Positions 15,799-62,590 of a stretch of 64,000 bases of DNA are shown piece after piece. The notes beneath the pieces are model-generated. The model did no database searches and was not told where the DNA came from. It worked only from the letters and a program-made list of their open reading frames with translations. This DNA comes from Haliotis rubra. Taxonomy: Eukaryota. Made by a program: the position numbers and the translations under genes. Position 1 is the stretch's first letter. Each line of letters begins with the position of its first letter. The DNA is taken from positions 558,001-622,000 of the forward strand of contig NW_025766181.1 in NCBI RefSeq assembly GCF_003918875.1. Direction: 5' to 3'.

Positions 15799-16885
15799 TA
15801 GTCAGCAGCAAAAAAAATGTCAGTACGAATTCAAAATTTGATAGGCACTGTAATCAAATCATTACGGAAATGGACACAATAAGCGGATCAAAACCATTTT
15901 TTGTGTACAATATCTTGACACATCAGTGAATAACTCAGCAGAATAACTTCAAGACATTACGTGAACGTTTGCAGTCCATTCAGACTCTTGACTTCAGTAT
16001 CTAGTGTGACCACAACGAGCGGCAATAACTGCAGCACAGCGTCTATGCATGGGGTGCACCAATCGATTGATGAAGGCCACTGGCACCTGGAAACACACTC
16101 TGTGAAAGGCCTGGCGCAGAAGATCGTCTGTGTTCGGCCTTGGTATGACATTATTCAGACTCCGCTGAATTTCATCCCAAAGATGTTCAATTGGGTTTAA
16201 ATCAGGACTAAGGGCTGGCCACTGCATAATGCTGACACCGTTCTGCTGTAGGAAGTTCCGTGTAGCTCTGGCAGTATGAGCCCGTGCGTTATCATGCTTG
16301 AAAATGTTGTTCCGGTGACGTGCGAAATGTGGTATGACTCGGGGTCTGAGAGCTTGGTCGATGTAGCGCACTGCTGTGATGCCGCCTCCTCTCCCTGGAC
16401 CAAGGTTCTGGAACACCACAGCATCCTTTCTCTGGTTCAGGCCTATTCCACCCCATACCATGATACTTGCACCTCCCCATGAGTCGCTTTCCTTAATACC
16501 TTGGTCCGAGTAACGCTGGCCACGTCGTCGCCATATTCTTGTTCTGCCATCTGCAGTTGATACGCAGTACCTACTCTCATCTGACCTGGAAGTGATTGGC
16601 AACGGCTTGTGCAGTGTGGCCAGCTTCAAGTCTTCCTAGCGCCTGGTTCCTATCAGCTATCATGAGTCGCGGCATCCTGCTGACGTTGTAATGTGAATGT
16701 TTCAACCAGGTTTGGGGGGTGCATTTTATAGGGCTGGTCCTTGTGAACAGCACGTGCAGCATGAGTTGCATGAAAAGTTTGGGAAGGAATGTCTTTGCTC
16801 AGGTAAAGTTGGAGATGTTGTCAAAATATACAATCAATACAATATACATTAAATTCCAAACTGACGTTTCTTTTGCTGCTTAGTA
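15799..16885 (-). mobile_element. Tc1-like transposon A, internally deleted copy
   Basis: TIRs TA(G/C)TCAGCAGCAAAA...GTCAGT / ACTGACGTTTCTTTTGCTGCTTAGTA; motifs SDESR, IMVWGGI, HDNARAH, WPALSPDLNPIEHLW; ~355 bp absent relative to copy at 31511-32442; empty site at ~9634. Confidence 0.9.
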
Positions 16886-21942: not shown

Positions 21943-23342
21943 AGCTTGTGCAGACATTTTCACATTGTGATAGAATTACATGATCCGACTTTTTGTAGCC
22001 TGCTGGACAGGCATATCACAGATCATACAACTACTTTAGATTCTCACTGCAATGCATCCCATGTACATGGACGTGTTTCATGGTCTATAAACACCGCTTC
22101 ATCTTTGTCCATCACAACTTTACATCATTTTGATAGAATTTTGTTCTTTTTTGATAAATAAAATCTCTACTAAACATATTCGTGTTTATTCTTTCATTGT
22201 CAATATTGCAATATTTATTTCATGTACTTACCTTTTTCATGTCATTTTCTAATTTGCTCACCGCGTTGGCCAACGCCTTTGGGGAAGTATGAGGATATTA
22301 TTGTATAGTTATGATGCAGCGTTCAGTCTCTATACTCTGATAGAAAACTGCATTCATCAGAAGGACCCAAGTCCAATGAATAACACCCACAACAAACACC
22401 CATTTGAGGATTCCACAATATCATGTGCATAAGAAGTGGACGACGTTTATTCTTGAATAAAGGCAACATGGTACATAGTTTCAACAGCTAATATATAGTG
22501 GCGTTACATACACCAGAAGCTGACACATAATTCCTAACGAAATGTTTGGGATTAAGTTTTCTCTCAAAATGGACCAAGTAAAGCGAAATTATATTGGTTG
22601 CCGTTTCAGAAAGATTACTTTTAGTGTACATTCGATATGTTATGATCTATTTAGGAGAATATCAAAACCAAAATGTTTTTGGTAAAATCGACAATAGTTC
22701 CTGGTCTGTTGTATGTAGCCTACAGTTTAATAAATATTGACTTTCTACTTTCAAATTTAGTATGTTTACTGAGGTACTATCGGAAGTAAGGTAACTTTTC
22801 ATTCAGATGTGTTTGAATTTTGTTAACGGAATATACATGACTTTTTTTTAACGGTGATAGTTAAATTTGAAATGATTTCATAAAGATGTGTTAATATAGA
22901 AAGGTCAAATTAAAATACACCAATATGCTACTGTACATTTCAATAAATACATAAATAAATAAATAAATGAATAAATAAATCTAGTACATGATGGCATATA
23001 CTATACTCAGCAGCAAAAAAAAAGTCAGTACGAATTCAAAATTTGATAGGCACTGTAATCAAATCATTACAGAAATGGACACAATAAGCGGATCAAAACC
23101 ATTTTTTATGTACAATATCTTGACACATCAGTGAACAACTCAGCAGTATTTCAAGACATTACGTGAACGTTTGCAGTCCATTCAGACTCTTGACTTCAGT
23201 ATCTAGTGTGACCATCACGAGCGGCAATAACTGCAGCACAGCGTCTATGCATGGGGTGCACCAATCGATTGATGAAGGCCATTGGCACCTGGAACCACAC
23301 TCTGTGAAAGGCCTGACGCAATAAATCGTCTGTGTTCGGCCT

Positions 23343-23790
23343 GGCCTCAGACCACAGTTACCCCCTTAACTTTTACCATGACCCGGAAGTAAAATATGAG
23401 AATATAGTGCCTTGTTTAAATGGGCTGTTCTGCTTGTGCTGATTTTTCAGGGTGACTTGTGATAGCTTAAATGAAAGGTAAGACATTGTACTTTATTGCA
23501 AAATTTTTGGGTCCACAATCTACTCATGGTATTGACACCAGCCTTCCTTGATTTGACCCCAAGTTCAAGGCTGTCTGGTGTGTTTCGGCTCGTAACTTCC
23601 GGTGACCATTGTTTACAGTGGATACAGCAAAATCGACATGGTCGATCCAGGCTCATATTTTGCCGATTAAGTGACAAGTGGCAGGTTGGTGAGCATGCAA
23701 CAGGAGAACAGCCTACGACCGATATTAATTATGGTGCACTGGCATGTCACTGTAGATAGCAAAGAAGGAAAATAATTGTGGTCTGAGGCC
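23343..23790 (+). repeat. Left long terminal direct repeat (448 bp)
   Basis: GGCCTCAGACCACAGTTA ... TAATTGTGGTCTGAGGCC (18-bp TIR, 1 mismatch). Confidence 0.95.
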
Positions 23791-24061
23791 TGATATGGTG
23801 AAGGTAGTGCAAGTGTTTAATTTGCTATATGTCTGTTATTTTTCAAAATATTCACTTGAAACTTTGCATATTTACTGCCAGGAGCATTTGAAATATGTAT
23901 ACATGTGTTTTCAACTGAAAATATTTTTTTTACATTTTTATGAATTTATTTCAGTTTTCTGATTGCATATTGTTTTAGTGAGTGAGCGGACGCATCATAT
24001 TTAGACATATTGGTTCAATTATGGTGAATGTATGTATCACTACACCGCACGTGCCTTATAG

Positions 24062-24463
24062 ATGCATGTGATACCTAAAATGGCTAATATTCAAGCCTTT
24101 TTCCAAAGATATAGAGCCAAGTTTGTGAAGAATTCAGTCCTCAGTGTGGAAAATGGCATATGTCATATGTGGACTGGAGCATGCAAGCACAGTGGGTATG
24201 GGGTGTTGCGGTATTTTTGCCCCATAGCCTACCAGTGGCGTACTACTCATGCTCACAGGCTGAGTTTTATAGTACACAGGGAAAACTTCGACATAGGTGA
24301 TTACGACATCAGCCATTTGTGCCACAACAGTAAATGCACCTATGTCGAACACCTGTCTGCTGAACCATACAGCATAAATGCAGACAGAGTGGCCTGTGTA
24401 AACAGGGGTGTGTGTAAAGGCCATGCACCTTTCCCAGATTGCCTTTTGGCATTGAAGTCATAG
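24062..24463 (+). CDS. His-Me finger (His-Cys box-like) endonuclease, intact copy
   Basis: CHMWTG...GYG...AHRLSF...DISHLCHNSKC..VEHL..EP..IN..R..C....C.GH...P.C. Confidence 0.9.
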   Translation: MHVIPKMANIQAFFQRYRAKFVKNSVLSVENGICHMWTGACKHSGYGVLRYFCPIAYQWRTTHAHRLSFIVHRENFDIGDYDISHLCHNSKCTYVEHLSAEPYSINADRVACVNRGVCKGHAPFPDCLLALKS

Positions 24464-24693
24464 GAGAACAGAAAAACAAAGGCAAAGTATATGAAAAATA
24501 CTATATCAAATAATATAGTAAAATTTTATTCATATTTCCTGATTTTCACCACAGTCACAGTTAGTTGTGACATAGCATTTATTCACAACACATAGCTTTA
24601 GAGACATTATGATGTATTTAAACTTAAAGTTACACAGTATCTGTCTTTAGGAAGTAATTAGCACATACAGTTCTGCAGCATCACTGCACATTT

Positions 24694-26694
24694 TCAATAT
24701 TTTGAATAAGAATGTTCATGGTTTTTTGCTGAAACACGGTACAGGGTCTAACTGACCCTTTCTGTAGTCCCCACTCTGCTTGTCAGTCTGTTTAGACTTC
24801 AAATGTTCACAGATCTTGCTTCCATGCTGTGTAAGTTTCCTTTTCACAACACTGGGGCTTTTCTGATAGTCTTTGTGATAGGTAGCCTCCTTGTCCATTT
24901 GTTCAAGTGACCGCACAGCTCGGCTTGAAAGTTTCACCCCAGAATGGTCGCACTTGTCGATTGCTGATGTCCCAGGGCCATTGTTGAGCCTGTGAATTGT
25001 GGAAGAAGCCCTCCCAATCATGTTCCTTGAAAAGTTTACATTCTTTGGCAAAGAAATACTCAGTGATCGATTGGCAGCTTCACATTTCTGTGTGTCTGTG
25101 TACAGTTTCATTTGTTCCACCACTTCTACACTTAACTTCATTTTGAGAATTTCATTAAGCAAGTGTTTATCATTGTCATCCATATTGAAATGAGTGATAC
25201 TGTTGCAGCCGAGGAACATGGATCGCTGCCACCAGCTGTTTGTTACACCTCCTCTACACACAACTGAGTACCGGGCACACCTGGAGCAGTCGCCGCTGTA
25301 GCACTTGAGGGTTGCTTCGAGCACTCTTGGTAAGATACTACGAAGTGTTTTCATGTCACCTGCATGATCTTTCATGAGTTCTTTTAGTATCAGGCTGCAC
25401 CGTGCTTTGACATCCTGGCTCAGCACCTTCTTTGCTTCCATTTTATGTGTACGAGTAGTGCCGGGGAACATATCTGGGTTAAAATCAGCTCTGTAACATT
25501 GTCGGAACTGTCCTTGAGCCAAGTGGGTTGGGTCAGCTAGCCTTTGCACCTTCCACATTGGGTCCAACACTTTGAGAGCTTTGTCTACTCCATCTGCAGA
25601 CTTCGAATCCCCATCGGTTGTGGCATACTTTATGAGTACACCCTGTAGTGCGAGCTGATTACCAATGTCCTCTCCCATTTTGAACTCAGAGAATGGAGTG
25701 AAGGCCGACATGTTCGCAGTACAGTCTGGGTGCCCCCCCTGGACATTTCACATCCATGCCTTTTCCTTTCAGCCAGGCACCAGTCCAGCAGAGCTTATTC
25801 TGGAATGACGCACTGACGATGAACTTCTTGTCAGTAACAGTTTCGCAGGCGATGCCGATTGCTTGTGATGCATTCTGCCCTGGCTTCTTCCTGCTTGCTA
25901 TTGTTGTCGAGTTGTATCGGCCATCCATAGCAATGTTCATCTCACACGGCTCAGTACCCCTCTTTCGATTAACTTCCTTCACTAACTCCACCTTTTCTGC
26001 CATATCCTTAGTGTTAAGTTCAGTTACAGCCTTAGCCACCTTGTTGGAGGTCCTCTGCATACTGCTCCTGCATGGGGGGTGGAATGTCCATGTTGGCCAT
26101 CAGTAACCTCGCTCTCGTATTTCCTATAGGTGTGTCCTGTAGACCCAAGGCAAGTCCCACGTTGGGTGCTGCTGGGTTTGGCCCAGGTTTACCCGTCTCG
26201 ATTTCTTTGTATAACTTCATTTCAGGTGCTACAAAGTCACATGTGACACATTTCAGTGTTATTTTCCAGCATGCTCCCCATTTTCTCTCCTTGGCTATCT
26301 GCAGCTGAGGGTCGTCACAGTCACTGGATGTTGACCGATGCAGTCGCAGAGCTGTGTTCCATGCTTCGGCCACCTTTTCATTGTCGACTAGTCGCATACC
26401 CTCCAAGTCATCTTTGCTTGACTCTTGTTTCAGGTCATGCTTGCTCGTTGAAGTGGGACGCAGCAGCCTCACTGAAGTAGAGATGCCATCGCAGTCAGGT
26501 GTTGACAGCCCAGTGCCATCCAGCCTTGACTTGGTGACCAGGGAGAAGTCTTCTGCACTCAACCTAGTGACTGTCCTGGGTATCTGGGGTGGAGAGGCAC
26601 TTTCCGACTCTTCCGATTCAAGGGTGAGACCTTTGTTCCAGGGAGTATGGCCTTTGCTGAACTGTGACTTGATTCTCTTGCGGTCGCCTTTCAT
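24694..26694 (-). CDS. Kolobok-type DDD/E transposase, copy 1 (~665 aa after repairing 3 homopolymer frameshifts)
   Basis: CxxC (KCVTC), IAMDGRYNS, TTDGDS, TQKCEAANRS; frameshifts at ~26074, ~25735, ~24722; probable start MKG at 26694 downstream of TATATAAG. Confidence 0.8.
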
Positions 26695-26941
26695 CGTGAT
26701 TGTGTCGAATAGAACTAATGAGCTCTGAGCACAGCATGTACTTATATATCCCATCTCTGTGTGTTGTCACTGGCACTGACAAGCAGGTATATGTATTAGA
26801 AAATGTATTGGAAACTCAAGACATACACATGTCTTGCGCCACTGGTGTAAATCGCAGTTGAGCCATACACACCTACTGACACTTTGTCGCGTATTGGCCA
26901 GGTGTCAGGTGAGAGTGGACATGCTTGGTGACTCGCTGCAC

Positions 26942-26979
26942 TTGATTGGCTGTACTCAGCTACTTGTGCAGCCAATCAA
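26942..26979. promoter_or_regulatory. Inverted pair of CCAAT boxes upstream of transposase
   Basis: TTGATTGGCTGTAC-N10-GTGCAGCCAATCAA; repeated at ~30579-30616. Confidence 0.5.
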
Positions 26980-27696
26980 TTTAACGAGGAAAGATAGGGC
27001 TTTCTAATGAATACAAATTTAACAGTTTCAATTTTCATTTTTGTTGAAAAATATGAACTTTAATGGAATTATTTTAGTATAAAATGCATGTATGTATATA
27101 AAAATAGAGAAAAAAATGAAAAAAAATGCTTTAATGGACTGAAATCATTGTCCTTTGATAGCACATGCAATAACAAAAGAGGAACACTTGATGTTTTTGT
27201 CAATTTCCACCTGGTTATGGAGTTATAGACAAATTAGAATTGTGTTTGAAATTAATTCATGCCCAAAATTAACACTCAAATGCCAGAGATACAGCATGGA
27301 GTAAAAGCAGTATAAGTCAAGTTGTGTATGAGTTAGGGCTTTCAAATTTTCTGTGAGCCTTACATAGTGTCTGGGCTTAGTATTGATTAAGTTTTATTTA
27401 ATTTGCAGACTTTTTTGGTGTCCTGATATGGTGAAGGTAGTGCAAGTGTTTAATTTGCTATATGTCTGTTATTTTTCAAAATATTCACTTGAAACTTTGC
27501 ATATTTACTGCCAGGAGCATTTGAAATATGTATACATGTGTTTTCAACTGAAAATATTTTTTTTTACATTTTTTATGAATTTATTTCAGTTTTCTGATTG
27601 CATATTGTTTTAGTGAGTGAGCGGACGCATCATATTTAGACATATTGGTTCAATTATGGTGAATGTATGTATCACTACACCGCACGTGCCTTATAG

Positions 27697-28100
27697 ATGC
27701 ATGTGATACCTAAAATGGCTAATATTCAAGCCTTTTTCCAAAGATATAGAGCCAAGTTTGTGAAGAATTCAGTCCTCAGTGTGGAAAATGGCATATGTCA
27801 TATGTGGACTGGAGCATGCAAGCACAGTGGGTATGGGGTGTGTTGCGGTATTTTTGCCCCATAGCCTACCAGTGGCGTACTACTCATGCTCACAGGCTGA
27901 GTTTTATAGTACACAGGGAAAACTTCGACATAGGTGATTACGACATCAGCCATTTGTGCCACAACAGTAAATGCACCTATGTCGAACACCTGTCTGCTGA
28001 ACCACACAGCATAAATGCAGACAGAGTGGCCTGTGTAAACAGGGGTGTGTGTAAAGGCCATGCACCTTTCCCAGATTGCCTTTTGGCATTGAAGTCATAG
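27697..28100 (+). pseudogene. His-Me finger endonuclease, copy 2 (2-bp TG insertion at ~27839)
   Basis: Near-identical to 24062-24463; GGGGTGTGTTG vs GGGGTGTTG. Confidence 0.85.
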
Positions 28101-28330
28101 GAGAACAGAAAAACAAAGGCAAAGTATATGAAAAATACTATATCAAATAATATAGTAAAATTTTATTCATATTTCCTGATTTTCACCACAGTCACAGTTA
28201 GTTGTGACATAGCATTTATTCACAACACATAGCTTTAGAGACATTATGATGTATTTAAACTTAAAGTTACACAGTATCTGTCTTTAGGAAGTAATTAGCA
28301 CATACAGTTCTGCAGCATCACTGCACATTT

Positions 28331-30330
28331 TCAATATTTTGAATAAGAATGTTCATGGTTTTTGCTGAAACACGGTACAGGGTCTAACTGACCCTTTCTG
28401 TAGTCCCCACTCTGCTTGTCAGTCTGTTTAGACTTCAAATGTTCACAGATCTTGCTTCCATGCTGTGTAAGTTTCCTTTTCACAACACTGGGGCTTTTCT
28501 GATAGTCTTTGTGATAGGTAGCCTCCTTGTCCATTTGTTCAAGTGACCGCACAGCTCGGCTTGAAAGTTTCACCCCAGAATGGTCGCACTTGTCGATTGC
28601 TGATGTCCCAGGGCCATTGTTGAGCCTGTGAATTGTGGAAGAAGCCCTCCCAATCATGTTCCTTGAAAAGTTTACATTCTTTGGCAAAGAAATACTCAGT
28701 GATCGATTGGCAGCTTCACATTTCTGTGTGTCTGTGTACAGTTTCATTTGTTCCACCACTTCTACACTTAACTTCATTTTGAGAATTTCATTAAGCAAGT
28801 GTTTATCATTGTCATCCATATTGAAATGAGTGATACTGTTGCAGCCGAGGAACATGGATCGCTGCCACCAGCTGTTTGTTACACCTCCTCTACACACAAC
28901 TGAGTACCGGGCACACCTGGAGCAGTCGCCGCTGTAGCACTTGAGGGTTGCTTCGAGCACTCTTGGTAAGATACTACGAAGTGTTTTCATGTCACCTGCA
29001 TGATCTTTCATGAGTTCTTTTAGTATCAGGCTGCACCGTGCTTTGACATCCTGGCTCAGCACCTTCTTTGCTTCCATTTTATGTGTACGAGTAGTGCCGG
29101 GGAACATATCTGGGTTAAAATCAGCTCTGTAACATTGTCGGAACTGTCCTTGAGCCAAGTGGGTTGGGTCAGCTAGCCTTTGCACCTTCCACATTGGGTC
29201 CAACACTTTGAGAGCTTTGTCTACTCCATCTGCAGACTTCGAATCCCCATCGGTTGTGGCATACTTTATGAGTACACCCTGTAGTGCGAGCTGATTACCA
29301 ATGTCCTCTCCCATTTTGAACTCAGAGAATGGAGTGAAGGCCGACATGTTCGCAGTACAGTCTGGGTGCCCCCCCTGGACATTTCACATCCATGCCTTTT
29401 CCTTTCAGCCAGGCACCAGTCCAGCAGAGCTTATTCTGGAATGACGCACTGACGATGAACTTCTTGTCAGTAACAGTTTCGCAGGCGATGCCGATTGCTT
29501 GTGATGCATTCTGCCCTGGCTTCTTCCTGCTTGCTATTGTTGTCGAGTTGTATCGGCCATCCATAGCAATGTTCATCTCACACGGCTCAGTACCCCTCTT
29601 TCGATTAACTTCCTTCACTAACTCCACCTTTTCTGCCATATCCTTAGTGTTAAGTTCAGTTACAGCCTTAGCCACCTTGTTGGAGGTCCTCTGCATACTG
29701 CTCCTGCATGGGGGTGGAATGTCCATGTTGGCCATCAGTAACCTCGCTCTCGTATTTCCTATAGGTGTGTCCTGTAGACCCAAGGCAAGTCCCACGTTGG
29801 GTGCTGCTGGGTTTGGCCCAGGTTTACCCGTCTCGATTTCTTTGTATAACTTCATTTCAGGTGCTACAAAGTCACATGTGACACATTTCAGTGTTATTTT
29901 CCAGCATGCTCCCCATTTTCTCTCCTTGGCTATCTGCAGCTGAGGGTCGTCACAGTCACTGGATGTTGACCAATGCAGTCGCAGAGCTGTGTTCCATGCT
30001 TCGGCCACCTTTTCATTGTCGACTAGTCGCATACCCTCCAAGTCATCTTTGCTTGACTCTTGTTTCAGGTCATGCTTGCTCGTTGAAGTGGGACGCAGCA
30101 GCCTCACTGAAGTAGAGATGCCATCGCAGTCAGGTGTTGACAGCCCAGTGCCATCCAGCCTTGACTTGGTGACCAGGGGAGAAGTCTTCTGCACTCAACC
30201 TAGTGACTGTCCTGGGTATCTGGGGTGGAGCGGCACTTTCCGACTCTTCCGATTCAAGGGTGAGACCTTTGTTCCAGGGAGTATGGCCTTTGCTGAACTG
30301 TGACTTGATTCTCTTGCGGTCGCCTTTCAT
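28331..30330 (-). CDS. Kolobok-type DDD/E transposase, copy 2 (2 frameshifts, ~30177 and ~29371)
   Basis: Near-identical to copy 1; ORFs 30130, 29322 and 28331 join into one protein. Confidence 0.8.
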
Positions 30331-31060
30331 CGTGATTGTGTCGAATAGAACTAATGAGCTCTGAGCACAGCATGTACTTATATATCCCATCTCTGTGTGT
30401 TGTCACTGGCACTGACAAGCAGGTATATGTATTAGAAAATGTATTGGAAACTCAAGACATACACATGTCTTGCGCCACTGGTGTAAATCGCAGTTGAGCC
30501 ATACACACCTACTGACACTTTGTCGCGTATTGGCCAGGTGTCAGGTGAGAGTGGACATGCTTGGTGACTTCGCTGCACTTGATTGGCTGTACTCAGCTAC
30601 TTGTGCAGCCAATCAATTTAACGAGGAAAGATAGGGCTTTCTAATGAATACAAATTTAACAGTTTCAATTTTCATTTTTGTTGAAAAATATGAACTTTAA
30701 TGGAATTATTTTAGTATAAAATGCATGTATGTATATAAAAATAGAGAAAAAATGAAAAAAATGCTTTAATGGACTGAAACCATTGTCCTTTGATAGCACA
30801 TGCAATAACAAAGAGGAACACTTGATGTTTTTGTCAATTTCCACCTGGTTATGGAGTTATAGACAAATTAGAATTGTGTTTGAAATTAATTCATGCCCAA
30901 AATTAACACTCAAATGCCAGAGATACAGCATGGAGTAAAAGCAGTATAAGTCAAGTTGTGTATGAGTTAGGGCTTTCAAATTTTCTGTGAGCCTTACATT
31001 GTGTCTGGGCTTAGTATTGATTAAGTTATATTTAATTTGCAGACTTTTGGTGTCCTGATA

Positions 31061-31510
31061 GGCCTCAGACCACAGTTACCCCCTTAACTTTTACCATGAC
31101 CGGAAGTAAAATATGAGAATATAGTGCCTTGTTTAAATGGGCTGTTCTGCTTGTGCTGATTTTTTCAGGGTGACTTGTGATAGCTTAAATGAAAGGTAAG
31201 ACATTGTACTTTATTGCAAAATTTTTTTGGGTCCACAATCTACTCATGGTATTGACACCAGCCTTCCTTGATTTGACCCCAAGTTCAAGGCTGTCTGGTG
31301 TGTTTCGGCTCGTAACTTCCGGTGACCATTGTTTACAGTGGATACAGCAAAATCGACATGGTCGATCCAGGCTCATATTTTGCCGATTAAGTGACAAGTG
31401 GCAGGTTGGTGAGCATGCAACAGGAGAACAGCCTACGACCGATATTAATTATGGTGCACTGGCATGTCACTGTAGATAGCAAAGAAGGAAAATAATTGTG
31501 GTCTGAGGCC
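31061..31510 (+). repeat. Right long terminal direct repeat (450 bp)
   Basis: Same sequence and TIRs as left LTDR apart from homopolymer lengths. Confidence 0.95.
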
Positions 31511-33176
31511 TTATCATGCTTGAAAATGTTGTTCCGGTGACGTGCGAAATGTGGTATGACGTAGGGTCTGAGAGCTTGGTCGATGTAACGCACTGCTGTG
31601 ATGCCACCTCCTCTCCCTGGACCAAGGGTTCTGGAACACCACAGAACCCACTCTCTGGTTCAGGCCTATTCCACCCCATACCATGATACTTGCACCTTCC
31701 CATGAGCCTCTTTGGTCCGAGTAACGCTGGCCACGTCGACGCCATATTATTGTTCTGCCATCTGCAGTTGATACGCAGTACCGACTCTCATCTGTGAACA
31801 GAACAGTTCTCTATTGCCTGTATCGCCAGTTTTGGTGTTGTAAGGCAAACTGTAGACGTTCACACCGATGACGAGGAGTGAGGATAGGTCCACGGTAAGG
31901 TCTACGGCATTGGAGGTCCCCGCTGTTAAGACGTCGGCGTACTGTATCAGTACTGATTGGTCTTCCGTGTGTTCCCACTGTTTGGCGTGCTGTTTCGGAT
32001 GCCTGCATGAAGGGATTCTGTACATGCTGTCGCACAGCATGGCAGTCTTGTCGTCTTGTGGTCACCCTTGGTCCGCCAGTACGGGGGCGATCATTTGTCG
32101 TGCTGGTGGCCCGGAAACGTTGCTGCAGCCTGTAGATGGTCCGAACGTTGACCTTGAAGTGATTGGCAACGGCTTGTGCAGTGTGGCCAGCTTCAAGTCT
32201 TCCTAGCGCCTGGTTCCTCTCGGCTATCATGAGTCGCGGCATCCTGCTGACGTTGTTTCAACCAGGTTTGTGGGGGCGCATTTTAAAGGGCTGGTCCTTG
32301 TGAACAGCCCGCGCAGCATGAGTTGCATGAAACGTTTTGGAAGGAATGTCTTTGCTCAAGTAAAGTTGGAGATGTTGTCAAAATATACAATCAATACAAT
32401 ATACATTAAATTCCAAACTGACGTTTCTTTTGCTGCTTAGTATTTATCCCACTGAGAAACTCCACAAGGCCAAATCACGGCCAGGGTAACGACACTTCAT
32501 ATATGAAATTTTAAGTATCATTGATGAAAGTTTCTTCTACGCATATTGAAGGATCATCATTCGTTGATGTAAAGAATATGTTAACTTTGTCTCCAGCATG
32601 CTTCTATAGTATCGAGACTCTATCCAAAATAAATATCCAAGAACACTTGTCGTCATTGAAATAACAAACACAATATGTGTACAATATAACAATTGTGCCA
32701 AAACGTTAATTCAACACATGCTTATTCCAATACCAATAATACTGGTTTCAGTTCATTCCTTGTTTTAAGTTACATACTAACTTTGATAACGACGGTAAAT
32801 GACCGTACTAGCATATTCAGCGGACATGGCCGCTTCGCTTTTTCTTGTTACGAAGTGCTGCGTAGACACATTCCTTGATTGCTGTAGACAATCTAACAAC
32901 ACGCACGTATTTCCTTTGTGGATGTGTAAATACATAACCGAGAAATAGTGAGCAACTGACATCTTATCTAAACGTTTAAGATAAAGTAGGCCAGCTATGT
33001 CAGGTGCAAACAATTGTTTAAACAAGAGGAATGAGAGTTTGCTTCTTTACTCATACACTTCCAGAAAACCACTACAAATAGACCAGAACATACATGTATT
33101 TAAGTTGTTATTAACTACAATAACTAAACATTTCAGCTTTGCTGGCTGAGGCCAACTGGCCAGTTAGCATTCCGCA

Positions 33177-39972: not shown

Positions 39973-40123
39973 NNNNNNNNNNNNNNNNNNNNNNNNNNNN
40001 NNNNNNNNNNNNNNNNNNNNNNNNNNNNNNNNNNNNNNNNNNNNNNNNNNNNNNNNNNNNNNNNNNNNNNNNNNNNNNNNNNNNNNNNNNNNNNNNNNNN
40101 NNNNNNNNNNNNNNNNNNNNNNN
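39973..40123. other. Assembly gap (N run)
   Basis: Ns. Confidence 1.
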
Positions 40124-42356: not shown

Positions 42357-43735
42357 AGAAATTATTGAGAATTTTAGGAATATGTTTAATTGGATTTCTA
42401 GTATAAACAACCTTGACCAGCTATCAAGTTCTTGGTTTCATTCAAAAGAGACAACTCCGTTAATCTTTTTTCATTAGTTTGTGAAGAGTTATCCCTCTTT
42501 GTTTACTTGCTAGCAGACGACATTTTCAGTGATCCTCAGTATGGATGATTTAGAGAAGAAGAAGTTGATTTTAGAATATTATAACAAGGACATCAGATCA
42601 GCTAAAGTGATTTCAAGTAGAACAGGCATCCCTTTGTCCACTGTTTATCGTGTTTTGAAAAATATTGCAAATGGATATGGCATTGGGCACCAGGGAGGCG
42701 CAGGTAGGCCCAGAAAATTGACTGTCGGTGACAGGAGGCGGCTTGGTATTCTTGTTTCTAAAAACAAACGAAGGAGTTTAGAAAACTTAAGGCTGGATAT
42801 GATTGATAGAGGAACTGTGGCTGTCTGTAAGGAGACAATTAGAACTGAGCTGCATACAATGGGTTGGCAGAAAAGTCGAGGAATTCCATCACCGATCATG
42901 AAACCTGAACAAAAGGAGCGAAGGTTGAACTGGTGCTTACAGCATAGAAATTGTAACTGGGACAATGTGATTTTCTCAGATGAAAGTTCTGTGTTGCTGT
43001 TTCCTAATACACTGAAATTCTGGACCAAACAAACTGAAAAACCTTTGTATCAGCGCCCAAAGTACAGTCCGAAATTTAACGTGTGGGGTGGCATATCTGT
43101 GTTAGGGGCAATGCCCCTCTGTGTATTTGAAGGGAATATGAACAGTGAGCGGTACACAGATATTCTCGAGGGACATTTACTTCCATCTGCTCACGTGTTC
43201 TATGGAAAGTTTTGGATTTACCAGCAGGACAACGACCCAAAACATCGTTCAAAGCATTCACAGGCCTGGTTTCGGACCCAAAATATGACATTGGGGTAGC
43301 CTATTGGCCGTTGGCTCTACGCCGAAGACCTTAAATCCAATGGGTACAATGTGTGAAGTTTCTGGTGTCTCCCGCCGTGATGTTGCTGGAAAGCGGCGTG
43401 TCCAAACTAAGTCAAACCCAAACTATGACATCTGATTGGCAAAGCTATTGCCTGACCTAAATCCAATGGAAAATGTTTGAAGGAAAGTGTCAATAAGAAA
43501 AATCGATATTGGGAAAGAAGACAGCATGGACCACGACTTTCTAACTTCTTTGATCAGTAGTATGCCCCGCTGCATTGACGCCTGCATTGCTGCCCATGGT
43601 GACTTGACAAAATACTAACTGTTCACCTGTCTTTGAATCTGGAGTTATGTTCTGCTAATATTCACATTTAATACGTGAGTAATGAGTGAAAACAAAATTA
43701 CAATCTTAAATTCTCAATAATTTCTGGTTGTACTG
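42357..43735 (+). mobile_element. Tc1-like transposon C, interrupted by a SINE
   Basis: ORF 42529-43299 (GIPLSTVYRV, GRPRKL, VIFSDES, VWGGIS, QQDNDPKH) resumes after the SINE with PDLNPMENV; TIR AGAAATTATTGAGAATTT / AAATTCTCAATAATTTCTGGTTGTACTG-TA. Confidence 0.9.
43292..43415 (+). mobile_element. SINE family A inside Tc1 C
   Basis: 16-bp TSD ACCCAAA(A/C)TATGACAT at 43276-43291 and 43416-43431. Confidence 0.85.
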
Positions 43736-44437: not shown

Positions 44438-44578
44438 NNNNNNNNNNNNNNNNNNNNNNNNNNNNNNNNNNNNNNNNNNNNNNNNNNNNNNNNNNNNNNN
44501 NNNNNNNNNNNNNNNNNNNNNNNNNNNNNNNNNNNNNNNNNNNNNNNNNNNNNNNNNNNNNNNNNNNNNNNNNNNNNN
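44438..44578. other. Assembly gap (N run)
   Basis: Ns. Confidence 1.
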
Positions 44579-49830: not shown

Positions 49831-52800
49831 CTAAACACTGGAGCCAATAAAATCTGGTGCTCCACGATTGCCTCCATCTACCATGAAAGATCCAGCATTG
49901 GTGAAGCGAGAATTGCTGAAAGACAGACCATTCATTACAGATAACTCAGGTTGGTTAGGGTCCATTTGGGAAGGTGATGGTCCAGTCCCATCAGCAACGA
50001 TACGATCATTTCGGATTCGAACAGAATTTCCGTTTCTGTTTGCATTGCTATCTAATGGTGTAGAGCGATATTCGTTGTTGCTACCGTTCTGTCCGTTTAG
50101 CCGTGTCATTGTTCCAGCATCCATCATGACGGGTCCGTTCATGTCTGTGTATCCACGGGCATTCATGAAAGATTCGACATTCATATCCATCATTGATTGC
50201 CCAGACCGATTCGTATCAAATTGGGAAGGAGATCTTTCAGCATTATTTGTGTTGCGATTGATACTTGAAGGTGAATCGGCCCATCTTGACATGGGCATGT
50301 TAGATGGAGAGTCTCTGGTAAAGTCCATCATGTTCCTATTCGGACCAGATAACCCTACTGAGTCTTGCAAACCAAGATATCCTAAGTCCACCATCATAGA
50401 TCCAGCTGGATCTGTGAAGCCACGATTATCCATGAACGATTGCTCGTTCCGATCCATTTCTGGTGATCCTGATGGCGAAAAGACATTGCTATTCGTTGAT
50501 GAAAGCCTTCGTCCATTTCTAGAGGTCGATCGGTCAATATCCATGGGAGTTTGAGAAGTACCATCAAACATTGGATTCGACATATCGTTATTGCTGCCTA
50601 CACTGGATGATACGCCCATTTCGGCTGGTGCACTGACCAGTGGAACTTGTTCTATGGCCAAACCCAACATATCCAGATCGGCCTGATTCAAGTTGTTCAT
50701 GCGTGATCGACGTACATCCATTCGTCCGTCAAGAGTATCAAAGGATGTCGCAAATCCGCCAGGCCTGTTACCTCGACCACCAGAAATAGATGATCCACTT
50801 GGGTCCATCATACCAATAATATGTTGACTTGATGGGTTCGAGTCCTGTGCAGCCGGCCGGCTAAAGTCTCGGATCATTGACATGCTTCCATCAATATTAT
50901 TCAAGGAATTTGCAAACCCATCCATATTGTTCACCGTTTGCCCCTGGCCTCCAATCACAAAAGACCCTGTAGAATCCATCATGCCAATCATATTTTGTCC
51001 CAAATGTTGGAAATCTTGTGCAGCTGATCCTCCTATATTTCCCGTCATACCTCCGTCAGCAGTATTGAAGGAATTAGAAAACCCGTCAAGACTGTTAGTC
51101 ATTTGGCCTTGACCGCTAATCAGTGAAGAATCTTCAGCACCCATCACACTCATCAAATCATTTCCTTTTTGCTGAAAGTTCTTCGACATTGAATCTCTCA
51201 TACTTCCGGCCTGATTTCTGTCAATAGTATTTATGGATGTTGCAAATCCATCAATGTTGTTCCTCATTTGCCCTCGACCGCCAATTGTATTCAAGGAATT
51301 TGCAAACCCATCCATATTGTTCACCGTTTGCCCCTGGCCTCCAATCACAAAAGACCCTGTAGAATCCATCATGCCAATCATATTTTGTCCCAAATGTTGG
51401 AAATCTTGTGCAGCTGATCCTCCTATATTTCCCGTCATACCTCCGTCAGCAGTATTGAAGGAATTAGAAAACCCGTCAAGACTGTTAGTCATTTGGCCTT
51501 GACCGCTAATCAGTGAAGAATCTGCAGCACCCATCACACTCATCAAATCATTTCCTTTTTGCTGAAAGTTCTTCGACATTGAATCTCCCATATTTTCGGC
51601 CTGATTTCTGTCAATAGTATTTATGGATGTTGCAAATCCATCATTGTTGTTCCTCATTTGCCCTCGACCGCCAATCATAGAAGACCCTGTTGCATCCATC
51701 ATACCCAAAATATTCTGTCCCAACTGTTGAAAATCTTGTCCAGTTGATCCACCCATATTTCCTGTCACCCTTCTGTCCATAGCATCGAAGGAATTTGAAA
51801 ACCCATCAAGATTGTTCATCCTTTGACCATCCATCATTCCCATAAAATCGTTTCCTTGTTGCTGAAAGTCCTGTGCATTCGATCCACCCGCATTTCTGGT
51901 AAGTGGTCCATCTATAGTAGTTATGGATCCAAATCTGCCAAGTTTGTTCCTCATTTGCCCTCGGCCGTCATTCGTAGCAGAAGGTGTAGCATCCATCATG
52001 GTCATCATGTTTTGTCCGACTTGTTGGAAATCTTGTGCTGTTGACCCACCAATGTTTCCGTTCACAGTCCCACCTAAAGTATCCATGGATGGCGCAAATC
52101 TGTCAAGTTTGTTCCTCATGTCCCCAATCACGGAAGACCCGGAAGCATCCATCATACCGAGAATAGTTTGCCCTTGTTGCTGAAAGTCCTGTGCCGCTGA
52201 TCTGCTATCGGCCATCATTTCAGCCATGGGGTTTTGAAGATTTGGTGGTAGTTCGGCTGCATTTCCAATGGGGTCTGTTCTTCCAAATCCAACTGATTGC
52301 GGCTCGTTCATATATAACTGGTCTAAGGTATCGACATTGTTGACGCTTTGTCTGTCGGAATGCGGTACCGTGCCGTCCTGTCGACTGACCACCCATGACG
52401 GTTGCATGGGCATCGCTTGCCTTCCAGAAGGAACAAAGCTTATCTCTAGCACCTTAGCACCTCCCAGCATGTTGCTTGTTTCAGCGGCTAATATATCTGG
52501 TTCGGGCGTTGGGGAGAAGTTTGTATTCCCAGCATCCTGCAACGTTGGATTCCTAACAGCCACTTGATCACGCAGAGATGCCTGATTGCGAAGAGGACTT
52601 TGGTCACGACGAGGAACCTCATTACGGGGAGATGTCTGTTCACGGAGAGAGTTTTGATCACGTGGAGATGCTTGATTTCGACGGGAACCTTGTTCACGAC
52701 GGGAACCTCGATCATTGGAAGCTGCTTGCTGACGGAGAGTTGTTTGTTGTTCACGCTGAGACACTTGACTGCGGGGTGCTTGGTTACGAAGAGATGCTTG

Positions 52801-55433
52801 AGTTCGACGAGAAACTTGATCATTGGGAAATGATTGCTCACGAAGCGTTGTCTGATCACGCTGAGTTGCTTGGTTTCGACGCGATGCTTGATTTCGACTA
52901 GAACCTTGATCAAGACGAGAAGCCTGGTCATTTGGAAATGATTGCTGACGGACAGTTGTTTGTTGATCACGCTGAGACACTTGGTTGCGGGCTGCTTGGT
53001 TACGGAAAGTGGCTTGATCACGAGGAGAATTTGTTTGATCGCGAGGAAAACTTGTTTGATCACGACGGAATGTTTGATCTCCAGCAGATGCTTGATCCCG
53101 TTGAGGCCCTTGGTCACGAGATGTTTGATCACGACGAGAAGTTTGATCACGGGGAGATGTTTGATCACGGCGGGGAGCCTGATCACCATTAGACATGAAG
53201 GTGGTATTTTGTAGCCGAGTCATTTCCTTGGAAACGCGGGCATTTCCTTCTTGAGGACGCAGATTGTCCATTGATGCCGTGTTGATCTGCTCTGCTGACT
53301 CCATGTTTGACACGGTGGGAGTGTTTGTCTGTTGCATTGTCTGTCCCATGCGCCTTGAATTACGAACCATATTGGGAGTTTGCATCCTCTGTGTGGTTCG
53401 ACTTGGTGTTGGCATCATTGTCGGTGCTGGCCCTGGTGCTGCCGCGTTTGGAGTGGGTCGTCTCATATTCCGGAAACCACCAGGCTGTCTCGGGTAGAAG
53501 CGGCTACCCTGCTGCCTATTTCCCCCTGTGGGAAAACCTTGTCTAGACATTCTTCCCGGAAACGGCGAGTTGAATGGCCTTCTTCCAAAGCTGCCCCTAA
53601 AACTGTTGGGCCGACCTGAAAAAAACATTACAGGAACATTACTTAAAGTAATGCGGACACCATGCTGAACATTTGTCAGGAAATGGGAATCAGCCATTCT
53701 ACTGAGTAAGAGCATTTACATTTCTTCCAGACTCAACCTCTCCCTGGACTTATTGGCTAACATCAAACGCCAAAACGTGTAATTTGTTGTGGGATATTAT
53801 AGCGTTTCCCGAATGTGCTGAAATCTTGTGGTTTTTTAAGAAGAATCACATAACGTACCCATATCTCCCATGTGGGGAGGAAAGGGAAATCCAGGGGGGA
53901 ACGGCATTGGTCCAGCTTGTCGTCTGTGTCCTGAAATATAAGCGTGGATATTTGTGTGGATATTTGTTTTCATAACGGGAGAGACTCAGGTCACACAATT
54001 AGCTGCAGCACACACTATCTGATATGAGATAAAGAAGTCAGGCTGTGATGAGACGGAACTGACAACACTTGATGTTTGTTGTTGTTTTTGTTGTTGTTGA
54101 TTAACGTCGCGCTCAGCAATATTCCAGCTATATGGCGGTAGTCTGTAAATAATCGAGTCTGGACCAGACAATACAGTGTTCAACAACATGAACAAGTCAG
54201 CGAGCCTGACCACCCGATCTCGTAACTCGCCGCTTACGACAAGGATAGGTTACCTAAGATCAATTCTAAACCGGATTTTCACGGGTACCACAACACTTAA
54301 GACTGACCAATACACCTCGGAGAGTGCGGGTAAAACATATTACATATTGTTCAACGCGTCCAAAACATATATGCCCCTTAAATCAAATTGTATGGCCTCT
54401 TACTAATTAATTACACTACTGCCATGTTATGGAAACTATACAACTCTTCACGAATATTAGAAATGTGTGGGAAAAGAAAGTATATGGACGGTGTCCATTT
54501 TTTAATTAATAACTGCAACGTATGTTGTGAAATATGATTAGGTATATTCAACCTTCGCACATTCCAGCAAAAGTTTCTAGAACGTATCAGTTGGCTGGGT
54601 AATTTGAGGAAAACAGGACTCGATAACCATACCAGTTAAAATATTGATATCGTTTGATATGCAATGATAGCTACCATATCGTATTTAAATATATGCTGAA
54701 AAATAAATTCGTCATTCTCTTAACCATTTAACAACTATGATTCTCGATAACGTTTGGTTGCAACAGTATACTTCAACTCACGATGATGGTCTTCAGCTAA
54801 CTCTCCTCCAGAGGTTTGGGATAACATGTCTGCTTTGCCAGTCGCTGAAGAGAAAAGAACATATTGTCAGTGCTTTTGTCAAGTTCAGCCGAAGTGCTGT
54901 AAAATAAGTATACATCCGTGTTTGATGGGACTAAATATGTGACGTACAGTCGATGGCGATATATATTTGAGTCCTAGCTTACTTATCAGATAGACTAATA
55001 TATCGGATACTTTCAAACATTTACTAATTCTACAGATAATCCTTATATTGGCGTTTACTTGATCCTTGAAGTCGATTCACATGTTAAAATAGATCAACAT
55101 AGTTGAAATGATAAAAGAACAAAGATAAAATGCTAAAATAACATAGACCTAGTTGAAATGGAACGTACATTTATAAATAAATATACAAGTAAAACCTATC
55201 GATTTTTCAGGAATATTTTCTATCTCAACCTAGCTAACAAATAATAAGGATACTAAAACCCAAACAATACTGATGTTTACGTACTAGGTGTATGAACATA
55301 TACAGTCTATCTGTAATATTAAATGAAGTCAATCAGATAATTGTTCTAATCTATGAGTGTACTCACCATAAGTTGTCATACTTCCCAGAACGACCACGCC
55401 GAGTACCGTGAAAATCGTGTTTAATTTCGTCAT
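49831..55433 (-). CDS. Large secreted repetitive low-complexity protein, 1328 aa (exons 55433-55367, 54844-54782, 53930-53859, 53615-49831)
   Basis: MTKLNTIFTVLGVVVLGSMTTYA signal peptide; three phase-1 GT-AG introns splice in frame; RHRR site; RDQxS hexapeptide block; ~55-aa QDFQQ repeats; upstream donor at 56050. Confidence 0.88.
54071..54289 (-). mobile_element. SINE family B in intron
   Basis: Reverse match to 63537 copy, (CAA)n tail, TSD ACAACACTT at 54062-54070 and 54290-54298. Confidence 0.8.
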
Positions 55434-61545: not shown

Positions 61546-62590
61546 AGACTAGTGGTAACAGGCGAAGAATATCTAGTCCTTTGTGCAAGATAGTAGTGGT
61601 TTGAAGTGATTTATATTGGACCCTTTGTACTAAACGACAGTGGTAAGATTACTAAGAGGCGAGTTATAGCTGGTCCTTTCGCCTTAGCGTTAGGACTAAG
61701 AGGCAAGTTATATCAGGTCATTTATCTTGAACGCAAAGATTAAGAGGCATGTTATGTATGGTCCTTTGTGTTGCACGCTAGGAGTAGGAGGCAAGTTATA
61801 TCTGGTCCATTGTGTTGCACGCTAGGAGTAGGAGGCAAGTTATATCTGGTCCATTGTGTTGCACGCTAGGAGTAGGAGGTAAGTTATATCTTGTCCATTG
61901 TGTTGCACGCTAGGGGTAGGAGGCAAGTTATATCTGATCCTTTGTGTTCCACGCTAGGAGTAGGAGGCAAGTTATATCTTGTCCATTGTGTTGCACGCTA
62001 GGACTAGGAGGCAAGTTATATCTTGTCCATTGTGTTGCACGCTAGGAGTAGGAGGCAAGTTATATCTGATCCTTTGTGTTGCACGCTAGGAGTAGGAGGC
62101 AAGTTATATCTTGTCCATTGTGCTATATGCTAAGAGTAAGAGGCACGTTATACCTAGTCATTTCGCCTTAACGTTAGCAGTAAGAGGCAGGTGATATCTG
62201 GTACTTTGTGCTAAACGCAAGGAGTAAGAAGTGGTACATGTTGGGTCCCTTGTGCTAAACCCTAGGAGTATTGAATGAACAAACTTTATGGCTGACAACT
62301 TCTTTTATTTCGTGAGTGCTACGTTTCGATGCAGATTCTTGTACCGGTGTCAAGCAGGAATGTAACATGAAGAGCAGGAGATGTATACATACTGAGTGTA
62401 ACAAAGAACAAATATCGTTCGTCCCAACTCCTAAAATGCCACTCAAAGAAGAAACATGCTGTGATATATATTGGGTCCTTTGTTCTAAACGCTGGGAGTA
62501 AGAGGCGAATTACGTCTGGACCTTTGTGCTAAATGTTATGAGTAAGAAGTGATTTATATTAGGTCATTTGCGCTAAACGCTAGTCGCAAG
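61546..62590 (+). repeat. 44-bp minisatellite with homogeneous centre and diverged edges, interrupted at ~62270-62450
   Basis: Unit TGTGTTGCACGCTAGGAGTAGGAGGCAAGTTATATCTGGTCCAT, e.g. starts at 61811 and 61855. Confidence 0.92.

What the first reader, a model, noticed from the sequence alone, without database searches (positions are those of the whole stretch)
27400..27450. INT-INT junction is a precise LTDR-empty site and a candidate target of the element's own endonuclease
Seen: INT end before LTDR2 reads GGTGTCC-TGATA|GGCC, INT start after LTDR1 reads GGCC|TGATA-TGGTGAAG, and the internal junction reads GGTGTCC-TGATA-TGGTGAAG with a single TGATA. The LTDR therefore behaves as an independent insert with a 5-bp duplication (3-bp GAT if termini are AGG/CCT), and the middle LTDR of a dimer is cleanly absent. 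Described multimers are (LTDR-INT)n-LTDR. Inference: this is a footprint-free excision product, or a copy of a circular INT. The rejoined sequence may be the nuclease's homing site, with the LTDR protecting it as an intron protects its site. Its survival might relate to the frameshift in nuclease copy 2 or loss of an LTDR promoter.
Basis: partly seen in the sequence, partly recalled or inferred. Interest (0 to 1): 0.85.

Follow-up and report, generated by a model that had tools for sequence, protein, structure and literature searches.

The report
KolobokP transposon dimer missing middle repeat
The junction is real, but it is a published kind of structure: two internal regions of a KolobokP DNA transposon (abalone-type family) joined head to tail where the repeat between them was lost, and nothing in the sequence shows it is the target of the element's nuclease.

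Summary
Observation confirmed. Window 23343-31510 reads LTDR(448)-INT(3638)-INT(3637)-LTDR(450). The two INTs share a single TGATA at 27424-27428, and each remaining LTDR has TGATA on its inner side.

The element is a KolobokP DNA transposon (Kojima & Bao 2022, PMC9587614). Its LTDR and INT ends match the published KolobokP-1_HaRub family of the abalone Haliotis rubra.

The paper tabulates LTDR-(INT)n-LTDR, notes that only one copy of the 3-4 bp INT tip remains at such junctions, and explains them by excision of an LTDR.

"Footprint-free" cannot be told apart from two alternatives:
- loss of the LTDR plus 5 flanking bases on one side, which is the published excision footprint;
- a deletion between 7-bp direct repeats (CCTGATA).

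The homing-site idea has no positive support. The junction is less palindromic than random sites, and it persists beside an apparently intact I-PpoI-like nuclease gene. One fact keeps it alive: the INT tips (TCC-TGATA-TGG across the virtual junction) are conserved in families whose nucleases are only 45-58% identical.

The copy-specific frameshifts are homopolymer-length differences and may be assembly errors.

Verdict: an ordinary instance of a known structure, low interest.

The parts
23343..31510 (-). Whole element: KolobokP dimer LTDR-(INT)2-LTDR, 8168 bp. It lies in reverse orientation relative to the published convention (transposase on the direct strand).
   Evidence: Self-alignment, exact bounds, match to the published family ends.
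23343..23790 (-). LTDR1, 448 bp, with its own terminal inverted repeats (17 of the first 18 nt match; ends GG...CC).
   Evidence: Against LTDR2 it has 0 substitutions and 3 short indels.
23791..27428 (-). INT1, 3638 bp, counted with TGATA at both tips.
   Evidence: Against INT2 it has 6 substitutions and 11 indels of 1-2 bp.
27424..27428 (.). The single TGATA shared by INT1 and INT2, at the place where an LTDR plus a second TGATA is absent. With the preceding CC, the ambiguous stretch is 7 bp (27422-27428).
27424..31060 (-). INT2, 3637 bp.
31061..31510 (-). LTDR2, 450 bp.
24062..24463 (+). Nuclease gene, copy 1: an uninterrupted 133-aa His-Cys box (His-Me finger) nuclease.
   Evidence: Pfam PF05551, E 4.9e-09. 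Sequence match to I-PpoI at E 0.005, with the S-H, H, E, N and Cys/His positions aligned. Relatives are 120-135 aa and cover residues 11-132. The model has pLDDT 95.5 and its best fold match is I-PpoI.
27697..28100 (+). Nuclease gene, copy 2: broken by one frameshift as assembled, otherwise 98% identical in protein to copy 1.
24716..26754 (-). Transposase gene, copy 1: broken by two frameshifts as assembled, with no in-frame stops.
   Evidence: Pfam PF20700 on every piece. Three frames when compared with an intact 661-aa relative, covering residues 3-656 at 54% identity.
28331..30390 (-). Transposase gene, copy 2: broken by two frameshifts as assembled, one at the same place as in copy 1. The C-terminal tail also differs in length from copy 1.
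23263..23342 (.). Left host flank, a remnant of a Tc1/mariner-type transposase gene inside a ~7.2-kb host tandem repeat.
   Evidence: Aligns to the paralogous unit up to 16140.
31511..31600 (.). Right host flank. There is no target-site duplication with the left flank (GGCCT against TTATC).
   Evidence: Aligns to the paralogous unit from 16289 onward.
16141..16288 (.). The 148 bp present in the paralogous host unit but missing at the insertion site. It lies inside an open 211-aa DDE_3 reading frame (15994-16629, minus strand).

Best explanation
This is a KolobokP DNA transposon of the abalone-type family KolobokP-1_HaRub, or a close relative, in the published LTDR-(INT)2-LTDR form.

Inferred history:
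1. A monomer LTDR-INT-LTDR inserted into a Tc1-like remnant of one unit of a host tandem repeat.
2. [quoted passage not shown]
3. The middle LTDR was then removed by the element family's transposase, acting on that LTDR's own inverted ends.

The excised piece took the LTDR together with a target-duplication-length stretch (5 bp) from one side. Because both sides read TGATA, the result looks like a perfect empty site.

Shown: the anatomy, the family assignment, the young age of the duplication, and the nuclease's fold and conserved residues.
Inferred: the order of events, and that a transposase made the cut rather than a repair pathway.

No role for the nuclease is needed to explain the junction.
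For: Anatomy:
- The LTDRs are 448 and 450 bp, with 17/18-nt inverted ends GG...CC.
- A PF20700 transposase and a PF05551 nuclease are encoded convergently.

Family:
- The LTDR ends and both INT tips are found in the supplement of PMC9587614 only in KolobokP-1_HaRub. That family is listed as 4539 bp, LTDR 452, TSD 4/5, TIR 18.
- Two of six internal 14-mers also match, in the same part of that file.

The structure class is published. Table 2 of the paper lists LTDR-(INT)n-LTDR insertions. The text says that a 3-4 bp micro-deletion is almost always seen at INT-INT junctions, that only one TATA remains in KolobokP-1_MeMe, and that excision of an LTDR or a monomer explains this. It also says that excision removes 1-5 flanking bp on one side only.

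Age: INT1 and INT2 differ by 6 substitutions in 3.6 kb and the outer LTDRs by none. The host flanks differ from their paralogue by 4-6%.
Against: - No target-site duplication flanks the dimer, and 148 bp of host sequence is missing on one side. This copy has therefore had at least one further rearrangement, and it would not have been counted in the published tables.
- Both transposase copies are frameshifted as assembled, so any excision needed a transposase supplied from elsewhere.
- The same letters would result from a 7-bp microhomology deletion.
- No read-level support for the assembly is available.
Confidence: 0.6

Rival explanations
1. Microhomology deletion without transposase. The middle LTDR was lost by replication slippage or end joining between the two 7-bp direct repeats CCTGATA that bracket it, possibly after a break inside the LTDR. 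The published model places the nuclease's cut inside the LTDR.
For: The repeat at the deletion point is 7 bp, not 5. Both transposase copies here are frameshifted. The locus shows another non-transpositional change, the 148-bp host loss.
Against: The paper finds the same one-tip junction in several families with only 3-4 bp tips, and finds LTDR loss at element-host borders where no such repeat exists. A 450-bp deletion landing exactly on the LTDR ends by microhomology alone would be a coincidence repeated many times.
Confidence: 0.2
2. The homing-site reading. The rejoined INT-INT sequence is the recognition site of the element's I-PpoI-like nuclease. Cutting it would trigger repair from an LTDR-filled copy and so restore the composite structure, a protein-based 'restorative homing'.
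For: - The INT tips are conserved where the rest of the INT is not. LTDR end|TGATATGG is seen in the window, L005 and L011; TGCTATGG in L007/L008; TGATATCA in L012. Their nucleases are only 45-58% identical to the window's.
- ..TCCTGATA|LTDR start is seen in the window and in L008.
- The published consensus tips of four or five vetigastropod families agree.
- Inside a multimer this junction is the one LTDR donor site with a fixed sequence, which a protein nuclease could recognise. A review states that fixed-site condition in general terms.
- The paper itself asks for a mechanism that restores the composite after LTDR loss.
Against: - The junction has no dyad symmetry: best 4 of 8, with 95-98% of random sites as good or better. 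The closest solved relative, I-PpoI, is a homodimer on a semi-palindromic site according to the paper.
- The site survives next to a full-length nuclease frame, and six such junctions persist in three other genomes.
- The nuclease is encoded in the INT, not in the LTDR that would 'protect' the site.
- Other KolobokP clades have quite different tips, and some are not direct repeats at all.
- The conserved tips could equally reflect transposase contacts or target choice.
Confidence: 0.1
3. Copy of a circular or concatemeric INT. An INT excised through the inner LTDR ends closed on its 5-bp tips, and was then copied or re-integrated next to a resident INT.
For: The junction is what an INT circle closed on one TGATA would carry. 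The paper considers circular intermediates for this lineage.
Against: The published circle models contain an LTDR. No INT-only circle has been reported. It needs more steps than loss of one LTDR from a dimer, and nothing in the window calls for it.
Confidence: 0.05
4. Assembly artefact. The middle LTDR exists in the genome but was dropped when near-identical repeats were assembled.
For: The region is a 99.5% identical tandem. The excess of homopolymer indels suggests an assembly from error-prone long reads.
Against: The two INT copies keep 6 substitutions apart, so they were not collapsed. An assembler has no reason to remove exactly one LTDR plus one 5-bp tip. The same junction type is reported from several independent genome assemblies.
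Confidence: 0.05

Closest known systems
KolobokP LTDR-(INT)n-LTDR insertions (Kojima & Bao 2022, Mob DNA 13:24, PMC9587614), for example KolobokP-1_MeMe, -4_MyCo and -7_MeMe; family KolobokP-1_HaRub of Haliotis rubra
   Same: Architecture, LTDR length class (~450 bp), 18-nt inverted LTDR ends beginning GG and ending CC, convergent transposase and His-Cys box nuclease genes, and abutted INTs with only one copy of the tip. The LTDR ends and INT tips match the HaRub consensus.
   Different: - The tip here is 5 bp, against 3-4 bp in the described cases.
- This copy has no outer target-site duplication and lacks 148 bp of host sequence.
- The paper did not analyse insertion patterns in abalone.
- Identity to the printed consensus is perhaps around 90%, judged from 2 of 6 14-mers in a machine-read PDF. 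The species and subfamily are therefore not settled.
Bacterial composite transposons, and IS3/IS256-type copy-out circles with a spacer of target-duplication length
   Same: A flanking repeat unit with its own inverted ends can leave on its own. The excised piece takes a few flanking bases from one side, of about the length of the target duplication. The paper draws this comparison itself.
   Different: This is a eukaryotic element. The transposase lies in the internal region, not in the flanking units. No circle has been observed.
Group I intron His-Cys box homing endonuclease I-PpoI and its homing site
   Same: Nuclease fold and catalytic and zinc-binding residues. The geometry is similar: a site split by an insert.
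   Different: The nuclease is not encoded in the insert. The candidate site is not semi-palindromic. No cleavage data exist. The element also moves by a DDE-type transposase.
Restorative homing by transposon-encoded guided nucleases (TnpB/IscB, OMEGA), as reviewed in PMC13565253
   Same: The concept only: a transposon-borne nuclease cutting the empty donor site so that repair puts the element back.
   Different: Those nucleases use a guide RNA to follow changing sites. Here recognition would be by protein, at one fixed internal site. The review cites the KolobokP nuclease only for the untested induced-crossover model.

Membership tests
KolobokP (Kolobok superfamily DNA transposon) | Long terminal direct repeats of about 450 or 660 bp at both ends | tested here: met
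   LTDRs of 448 and 450 bp in direct orientation, with 0 substitutions between them.
KolobokP (Kolobok superfamily DNA transposon) | Each LTDR has its own short inverted ends (11-18 bp), 5'-RR...YY-3' | tested here: met
   17 of 18 nt inverted, GG...CC. The motif occurs only at the four LTDR ends.
KolobokP (Kolobok superfamily DNA transposon) | [quoted passage not shown] | tested here: inconclusive
   All reading-frame pieces hit Pfam PF20700, which Pfam labels 'Mutator-like transposase'. They are 54-57% identical to an intact 661-aa relative that sits beside a nuclease homologue. Catalytic residues and the position in a Kolobok tree were not examined. The assignment rests on the DNA match to the published family.
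KolobokP (Kolobok superfamily DNA transposon) | A small His-Me finger (His-Cys box) nuclease encoded downstream on the opposite strand | tested here: met
   PF05551. Sequence and fold matches to I-PpoI. Invariant S84, H85, E101, N106 and cysteines across 50 relatives.
KolobokP (Kolobok superfamily DNA transposon) | Target-site duplication of 3-5 bp around the whole insertion | tested here: not met
   The flanks read GGCCT and TTATC, and 148 bp of the paralogous host unit is missing. This is best read as a later change at this locus, not as a failure of family membership.
KolobokP (Kolobok superfamily DNA transposon) | Sequence match to a published family | tested here: met
   The LTDR ends and both INT tips are found only in KolobokP-1_HaRub in the paper's sequence file. 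Two of six internal 14-mers are also found there.
Published LTDR-(INT)n-LTDR structure class | Two INTs abutted with no LTDR, and only one copy of the short INT tip at the junction | tested here: met
   One TGATA at 27424-27428, matching the paper's description.
Homing endonuclease with its homing site | The nuclease gene lies inside the insert that interrupts the site | tested here: not met
   The nuclease gene is in the INT (24062-24463), not in the LTDR.
Homing endonuclease with its homing site | A recognition site of the kind used by the closest solved relative (semi-palindromic, bound by a homodimer) | tested here: not met
   Best symmetry is 4/8 at the junction, and 95-98% of random window positions do as well or better.
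Homing endonuclease with its homing site | The empty site is cut and the filled site is not | not testable with these tools
   No functional data. The only indirect evidence is that the site persists beside an intact nuclease frame.

The most novel reading that the evidence does not exclude
In one KolobokP clade (abalone, top shells and relatives), the ~11-nt sequence formed when two INT tips meet (TCC-TGATA-TGG) is a functional site kept constant over deep divergence. It would be the preferred landing site of the LTDR, the target of the element's I-PpoI-like nuclease, or both. An LTDR lost from inside a multimer or a circle could then be put back by repair. That would be a protein-based form of restorative homing in a eukaryotic DNA transposon.
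Probability: 0.1. Interest if true: 0.7.

Novelty: new member of a known kind. Interest (0 to 1): 0.25.

Why it matters
As it stands, this is one more example of a structure already catalogued for KolobokP, so it changes little.

Its use is as a clean, young specimen: two INTs 99.8% alike in substitutions, both outer LTDRs intact, and one full-length nuclease frame. It comes from a family whose two INT tips are identical.

The side observation may matter more. Conservation runs through the LTDR's inverted end and 6-8 nt into the INT, then stops, in families that are otherwise unalignable. The function of the KolobokP nuclease is still an open and untested question. A fixed internal site is the one condition under which a protein-guided nuclease could maintain a transposon's structure.

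Tried and rejected
- **Exact-protein look-ups.** Searches for the window's nuclease and for one transposase piece in public assemblies found nothing on record. No independent contig of this locus could be obtained.
- **Word-based protein search with the nuclease.** It gave one hit. Its contig L001 has no direct repeats and is not a KolobokP copy.
The junction 19-mer was scanned in the metagenome collection. It gave three loci (L002-L004), but they have no similarity to the element beyond about 23 nt. Two of the three were read (L002, L004) and carry the same unrelated flanks; L003 showed no match to the element either. These are chance hits, and a collection of this size makes some likely. This collection is not reads of the host species, so the result says nothing about misassembly.
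- **Dyad symmetry.** There is none at the junction. Scanning LTDR1 plus INT1 found only two 7/8 sites, fewer than the 4.5 expected. The only perfect palindrome is the hypothetical one made by abutting the two LTDR ends.
- **INT tips as extended inverted repeats.** Rejected, because the flanks are direct repeats, not inverted ones.
- **A universal rule that an INT starts and ends with the same letters.** Rejected. Several published families have unlike or inverted-looking tips.
- **Promoter question.** Not addressed. The promoter scan on offer is for bacterial sigma-70 sites, and no expression data are available.
- **Full identity to the published consensus.** Not computed, because that would have meant typing a long sequence into a script.

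Full report
**1. The observation**

Reading the window confirms all three junctions.
- LTDR1 ends ...GAGGCC at 23790 and is followed by TGATATGGTGAAG.
- GGTGTCCTGATA ends at 31060 and is followed by LTDR2, which starts GGCC.
- GGTGTCC-TGATA-TGGTGAAG at 27417-27436 holds a single TGATA (27424-27428).

A self-comparison aligns 23789-27428 with 27422-31060 at 99.5%, and aligns the two LTDRs at 98.7%. The exact parts are:
- LTDR1, 23343-23790 (448 bp)
- INT1, 23791-27428
- INT2, 27424-31060
- LTDR2, 31061-31510 (450 bp)

The LTDR end motif occurs only at the four LTDR ends. The inverted ends match in 17 of 18 nt.

The shared stretch at the deletion point is really 7 bp (CCTGATA), because the LTDR ends in ..GCC and the INT ends in ..TCC.

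**2. What the element is**

The INT carries two genes that converge:
- on the minus strand, pieces of a transposase (Pfam PF20700);
- on the plus strand, a His-Me finger nuclease (PF05551).

That paper defines KolobokP by the following features:
- an internal region between two long terminal direct repeats of about 450 or 660 bp;
- each repeat with its own 11-18 bp inverted ends, 5'-RR..YY-3';

Short strings from the window were searched in the paper's sequence file. The LTDR ends and both INT tips occur only in KolobokP-1_HaRub, from the abalone Haliotis rubra. That family is listed as 4539 bp, LTDR 452, TSD 4/5, TIR 18, with 136 LTDR copies and 45 INT copies. Two of six internal 14-mers were also found in the same part of the file. 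That file is a machine-read PDF.

The window therefore most likely comes from an abalone. It carries this family or a close relative, in reverse orientation. The species itself was not determined.

**3. The structure is already described**

The paper's Table 2 has a separate column for LTDR-(INT)n-LTDR, with six cases in three genomes. Its text makes these points:
- a micro-deletion of 3 or 4 bp is almost always seen at the junction;
- in KolobokP-1_MeMe the INT starts and ends with TATA, and only one TATA is found at the junction;
- excision of a solo LTDR or of a monomer explains this.

The paper also shows that LTDR excision takes 1-5 flanking bases from one side only. It likens this to IS3/IS256 circles, which carry a spacer of target-duplication length.

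With TGATA on both sides of the lost LTDR, that published footprint gives exactly the letters seen here. So does truly precise excision, and so does a deletion between the 7-bp repeats. 'Footprint-free' is therefore not a separate finding.

**4. History of this copy**

The two INTs differ by 6 substitutions in 3.6 kb and the outer LTDRs by none. The host flanks differ from their paralogous unit by 4-6%. The dimer is therefore much younger than the host's tandem duplication.

The host context is a tandem repeat of about 7.2 kb with at least four units. The insertion lies in a remnant of a Tc1/mariner-type transposase gene. The paralogous unit has an open 211-aa DDE_3 frame there.

There is no target-site duplication, and 148 bp present in the paralogue (16141-16288) is missing next to LTDR1. 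This copy has thus undergone at least one more rearrangement. A deletion running from a transposon end into the neighbouring DNA is a common by-product of aberrant transposition (general knowledge, not tested here).

**5. State of the genes**

Nuclease:
- Copy 1 is an uninterrupted 133-aa frame.
- A full search found 1986 representative relatives, typically 120-135 aa, which cover residues 11-132 of the query. Copy 1 is therefore full length.
- In an alignment of 50 relatives, S84, H85, C87, C92, E101, N106, C112 and C118 are invariant.
- These align with S97, H98, C100, C105, E114, N119 and C125 of I-PpoI.
- The predicted structure is confident (pLDDT 95.5). Its best solved matches are I-PpoI (probability 1.00, TM 0.52) and I-HmuI, as the paper reports.
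- Copy 2 has one frameshift.

Transposase:
- Each copy is broken by two frameshifts, one of them common to both copies. There are no in-frame stops.

The differences between the two halves of the dimer are 14 short indels against 6 substitutions. Twelve of the indels lie in runs of four or more identical bases. A pair of host repeat units shows 8 indels against 53 substitutions. The copy-specific frameshifts may therefore be long-read assembly errors. No argument should rest on them.

**6. The homing-site idea**

Against it:
- The junction has no dyad symmetry. The best score is 4 of 8 pairs, and 95-98% of random places score as well or better.
- It persists 3.4 kb from a full-length nuclease frame.
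- The nuclease is not encoded in the insert that would protect the site.
- Comparable junctions persist in other genomes.
- Other clades have different tips, and some are not direct repeats.

For it, one observation I did not expect. Contigs carrying nucleases only 45-58% identical to this one show the same letters just outside the LTDR:
- ...GAGGCT|TGATATGG in L005
- ...GAGGCC|TGATATGG in L011
- ...CAGGCC|TGCTATGG in L007/L008/L009
- ...GACGCC|TGATATCA in L012

On the other side, L008 reads ..CTCCTGATA|LTDR start, against ..GTCCTGATA| in the window. An alignment shows conservation through the 18-nt inverted end and 6-8 nt into the INT, and none beyond. The published consensus tips of HaRub, HaRuf-1, SteCin-1 and PhoLin-1, and one end of SteCin-3, agree.

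The tips are therefore constrained in this clade. That could reflect transposase contacts, LTDR target choice, or a nuclease site; the data do not say which.

The idea resembles the 'restorative homing' discussed for guided nucleases. A 2026 review notes that a protein-based homing enzyme could serve a transposon only where the site is fixed, and it cites the KolobokP nuclease model as untested. Inside a multimer the LTDR's donor site is fixed. I give this reading about 10%.

**7. Searches that failed**

- Exact-protein look-ups found no other assembly of this locus.
- The junction 19-mer in the metagenome collection gave only chance matches.
- L008 is an ordinary filled INT-LTDR-INT junction of another family, and L007 is the same unit circularly permuted.

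My script printed the bounds of reading-frame pieces and of their pairwise matches.

All typed strings were short and were taken from tool outputs.

**9. Verdict**

The structure is an instance of a published class in a published family. The nuclease-target interpretation is unsupported but not excluded. Interest is low. The conserved INT tips are the one lead worth a descriptive follow-up.

Noticed in passing
window 23785-23804 and 31049-31064; L005 44-70; L011 493-520; L007 435-462; L008 2019-2035 and 2495-2522; L012 311-336: The few bases just outside each LTDR end (TGATA plus 3 more) are conserved across KolobokP families whose nucleases are only 45-58% identical, while the rest of the INT is not alignable. 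The paper does not discuss this.
   Followed up: partly
window 23335-23342 / 31511-31520, and paralogue 16141-16288: The dimer has no target-site duplication, and 148 bp of the host Tc1-like gene remnant is missing next to LTDR1. This looks like a deletion running from the transposon end into the host DNA.
   Followed up: partly
window 23343-31510: The differences between the two halves of the dimer are mostly 1-bp length changes in homopolymer runs (14 indels against 6 substitutions). This may be an assembly-error signature and would affect every frameshift call in this window.
   Followed up: partly
window ~2000-38200: A host tandem repeat with a period of about 6.0-7.3 kb and at least four units, 72-100% alike piece by piece. 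It includes a Tc1/mariner-type DDE_3 frame (15994-16629, minus strand). The KolobokP dimer interrupts one unit.
   Followed up: partly
window 49831-53715 (minus strand): A 1294-aa open frame with no Pfam match. It contains 390-, 165- and 108-bp internal tandem repeats (50892-52126, 52667-53029).
   Followed up: no
window 61565-62304: A satellite with a 44-bp unit, about 12-17 copies, 85% matches.
   Followed up: no
window 42529-43299 (+) and 56474-57694 (-): Other mobile-element remnants: a Tc1-type transposase frame (HTH_Tnp_Tc3_2 plus DDE_3) and a reverse-transcriptase fragment (RVT_1).
   Followed up: no
L007 1260-3245 (-) and 746-1123 (+); L008: A related KolobokP unit with an uninterrupted 661-aa transposase and a 125-aa nuclease (from a Logan run and an NCBI assembly). 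Its two INT tips differ by one base (TGATA / TGCTA), which would make the origin of the surviving tip readable at any empty junction of that family.
   Followed up: no
window 24716-26754 and 28331-30390: Pfam labels the transposase domain 'Mutator-like' (PF20700), whereas the paper places the family in the Kolobok superfamily. This is a difference in naming that I did not resolve.
   Followed up: no
window 39973-40123 and 44438-44578: Two runs of N (151 and 141 bases). They were left as they are.
   Followed up: no
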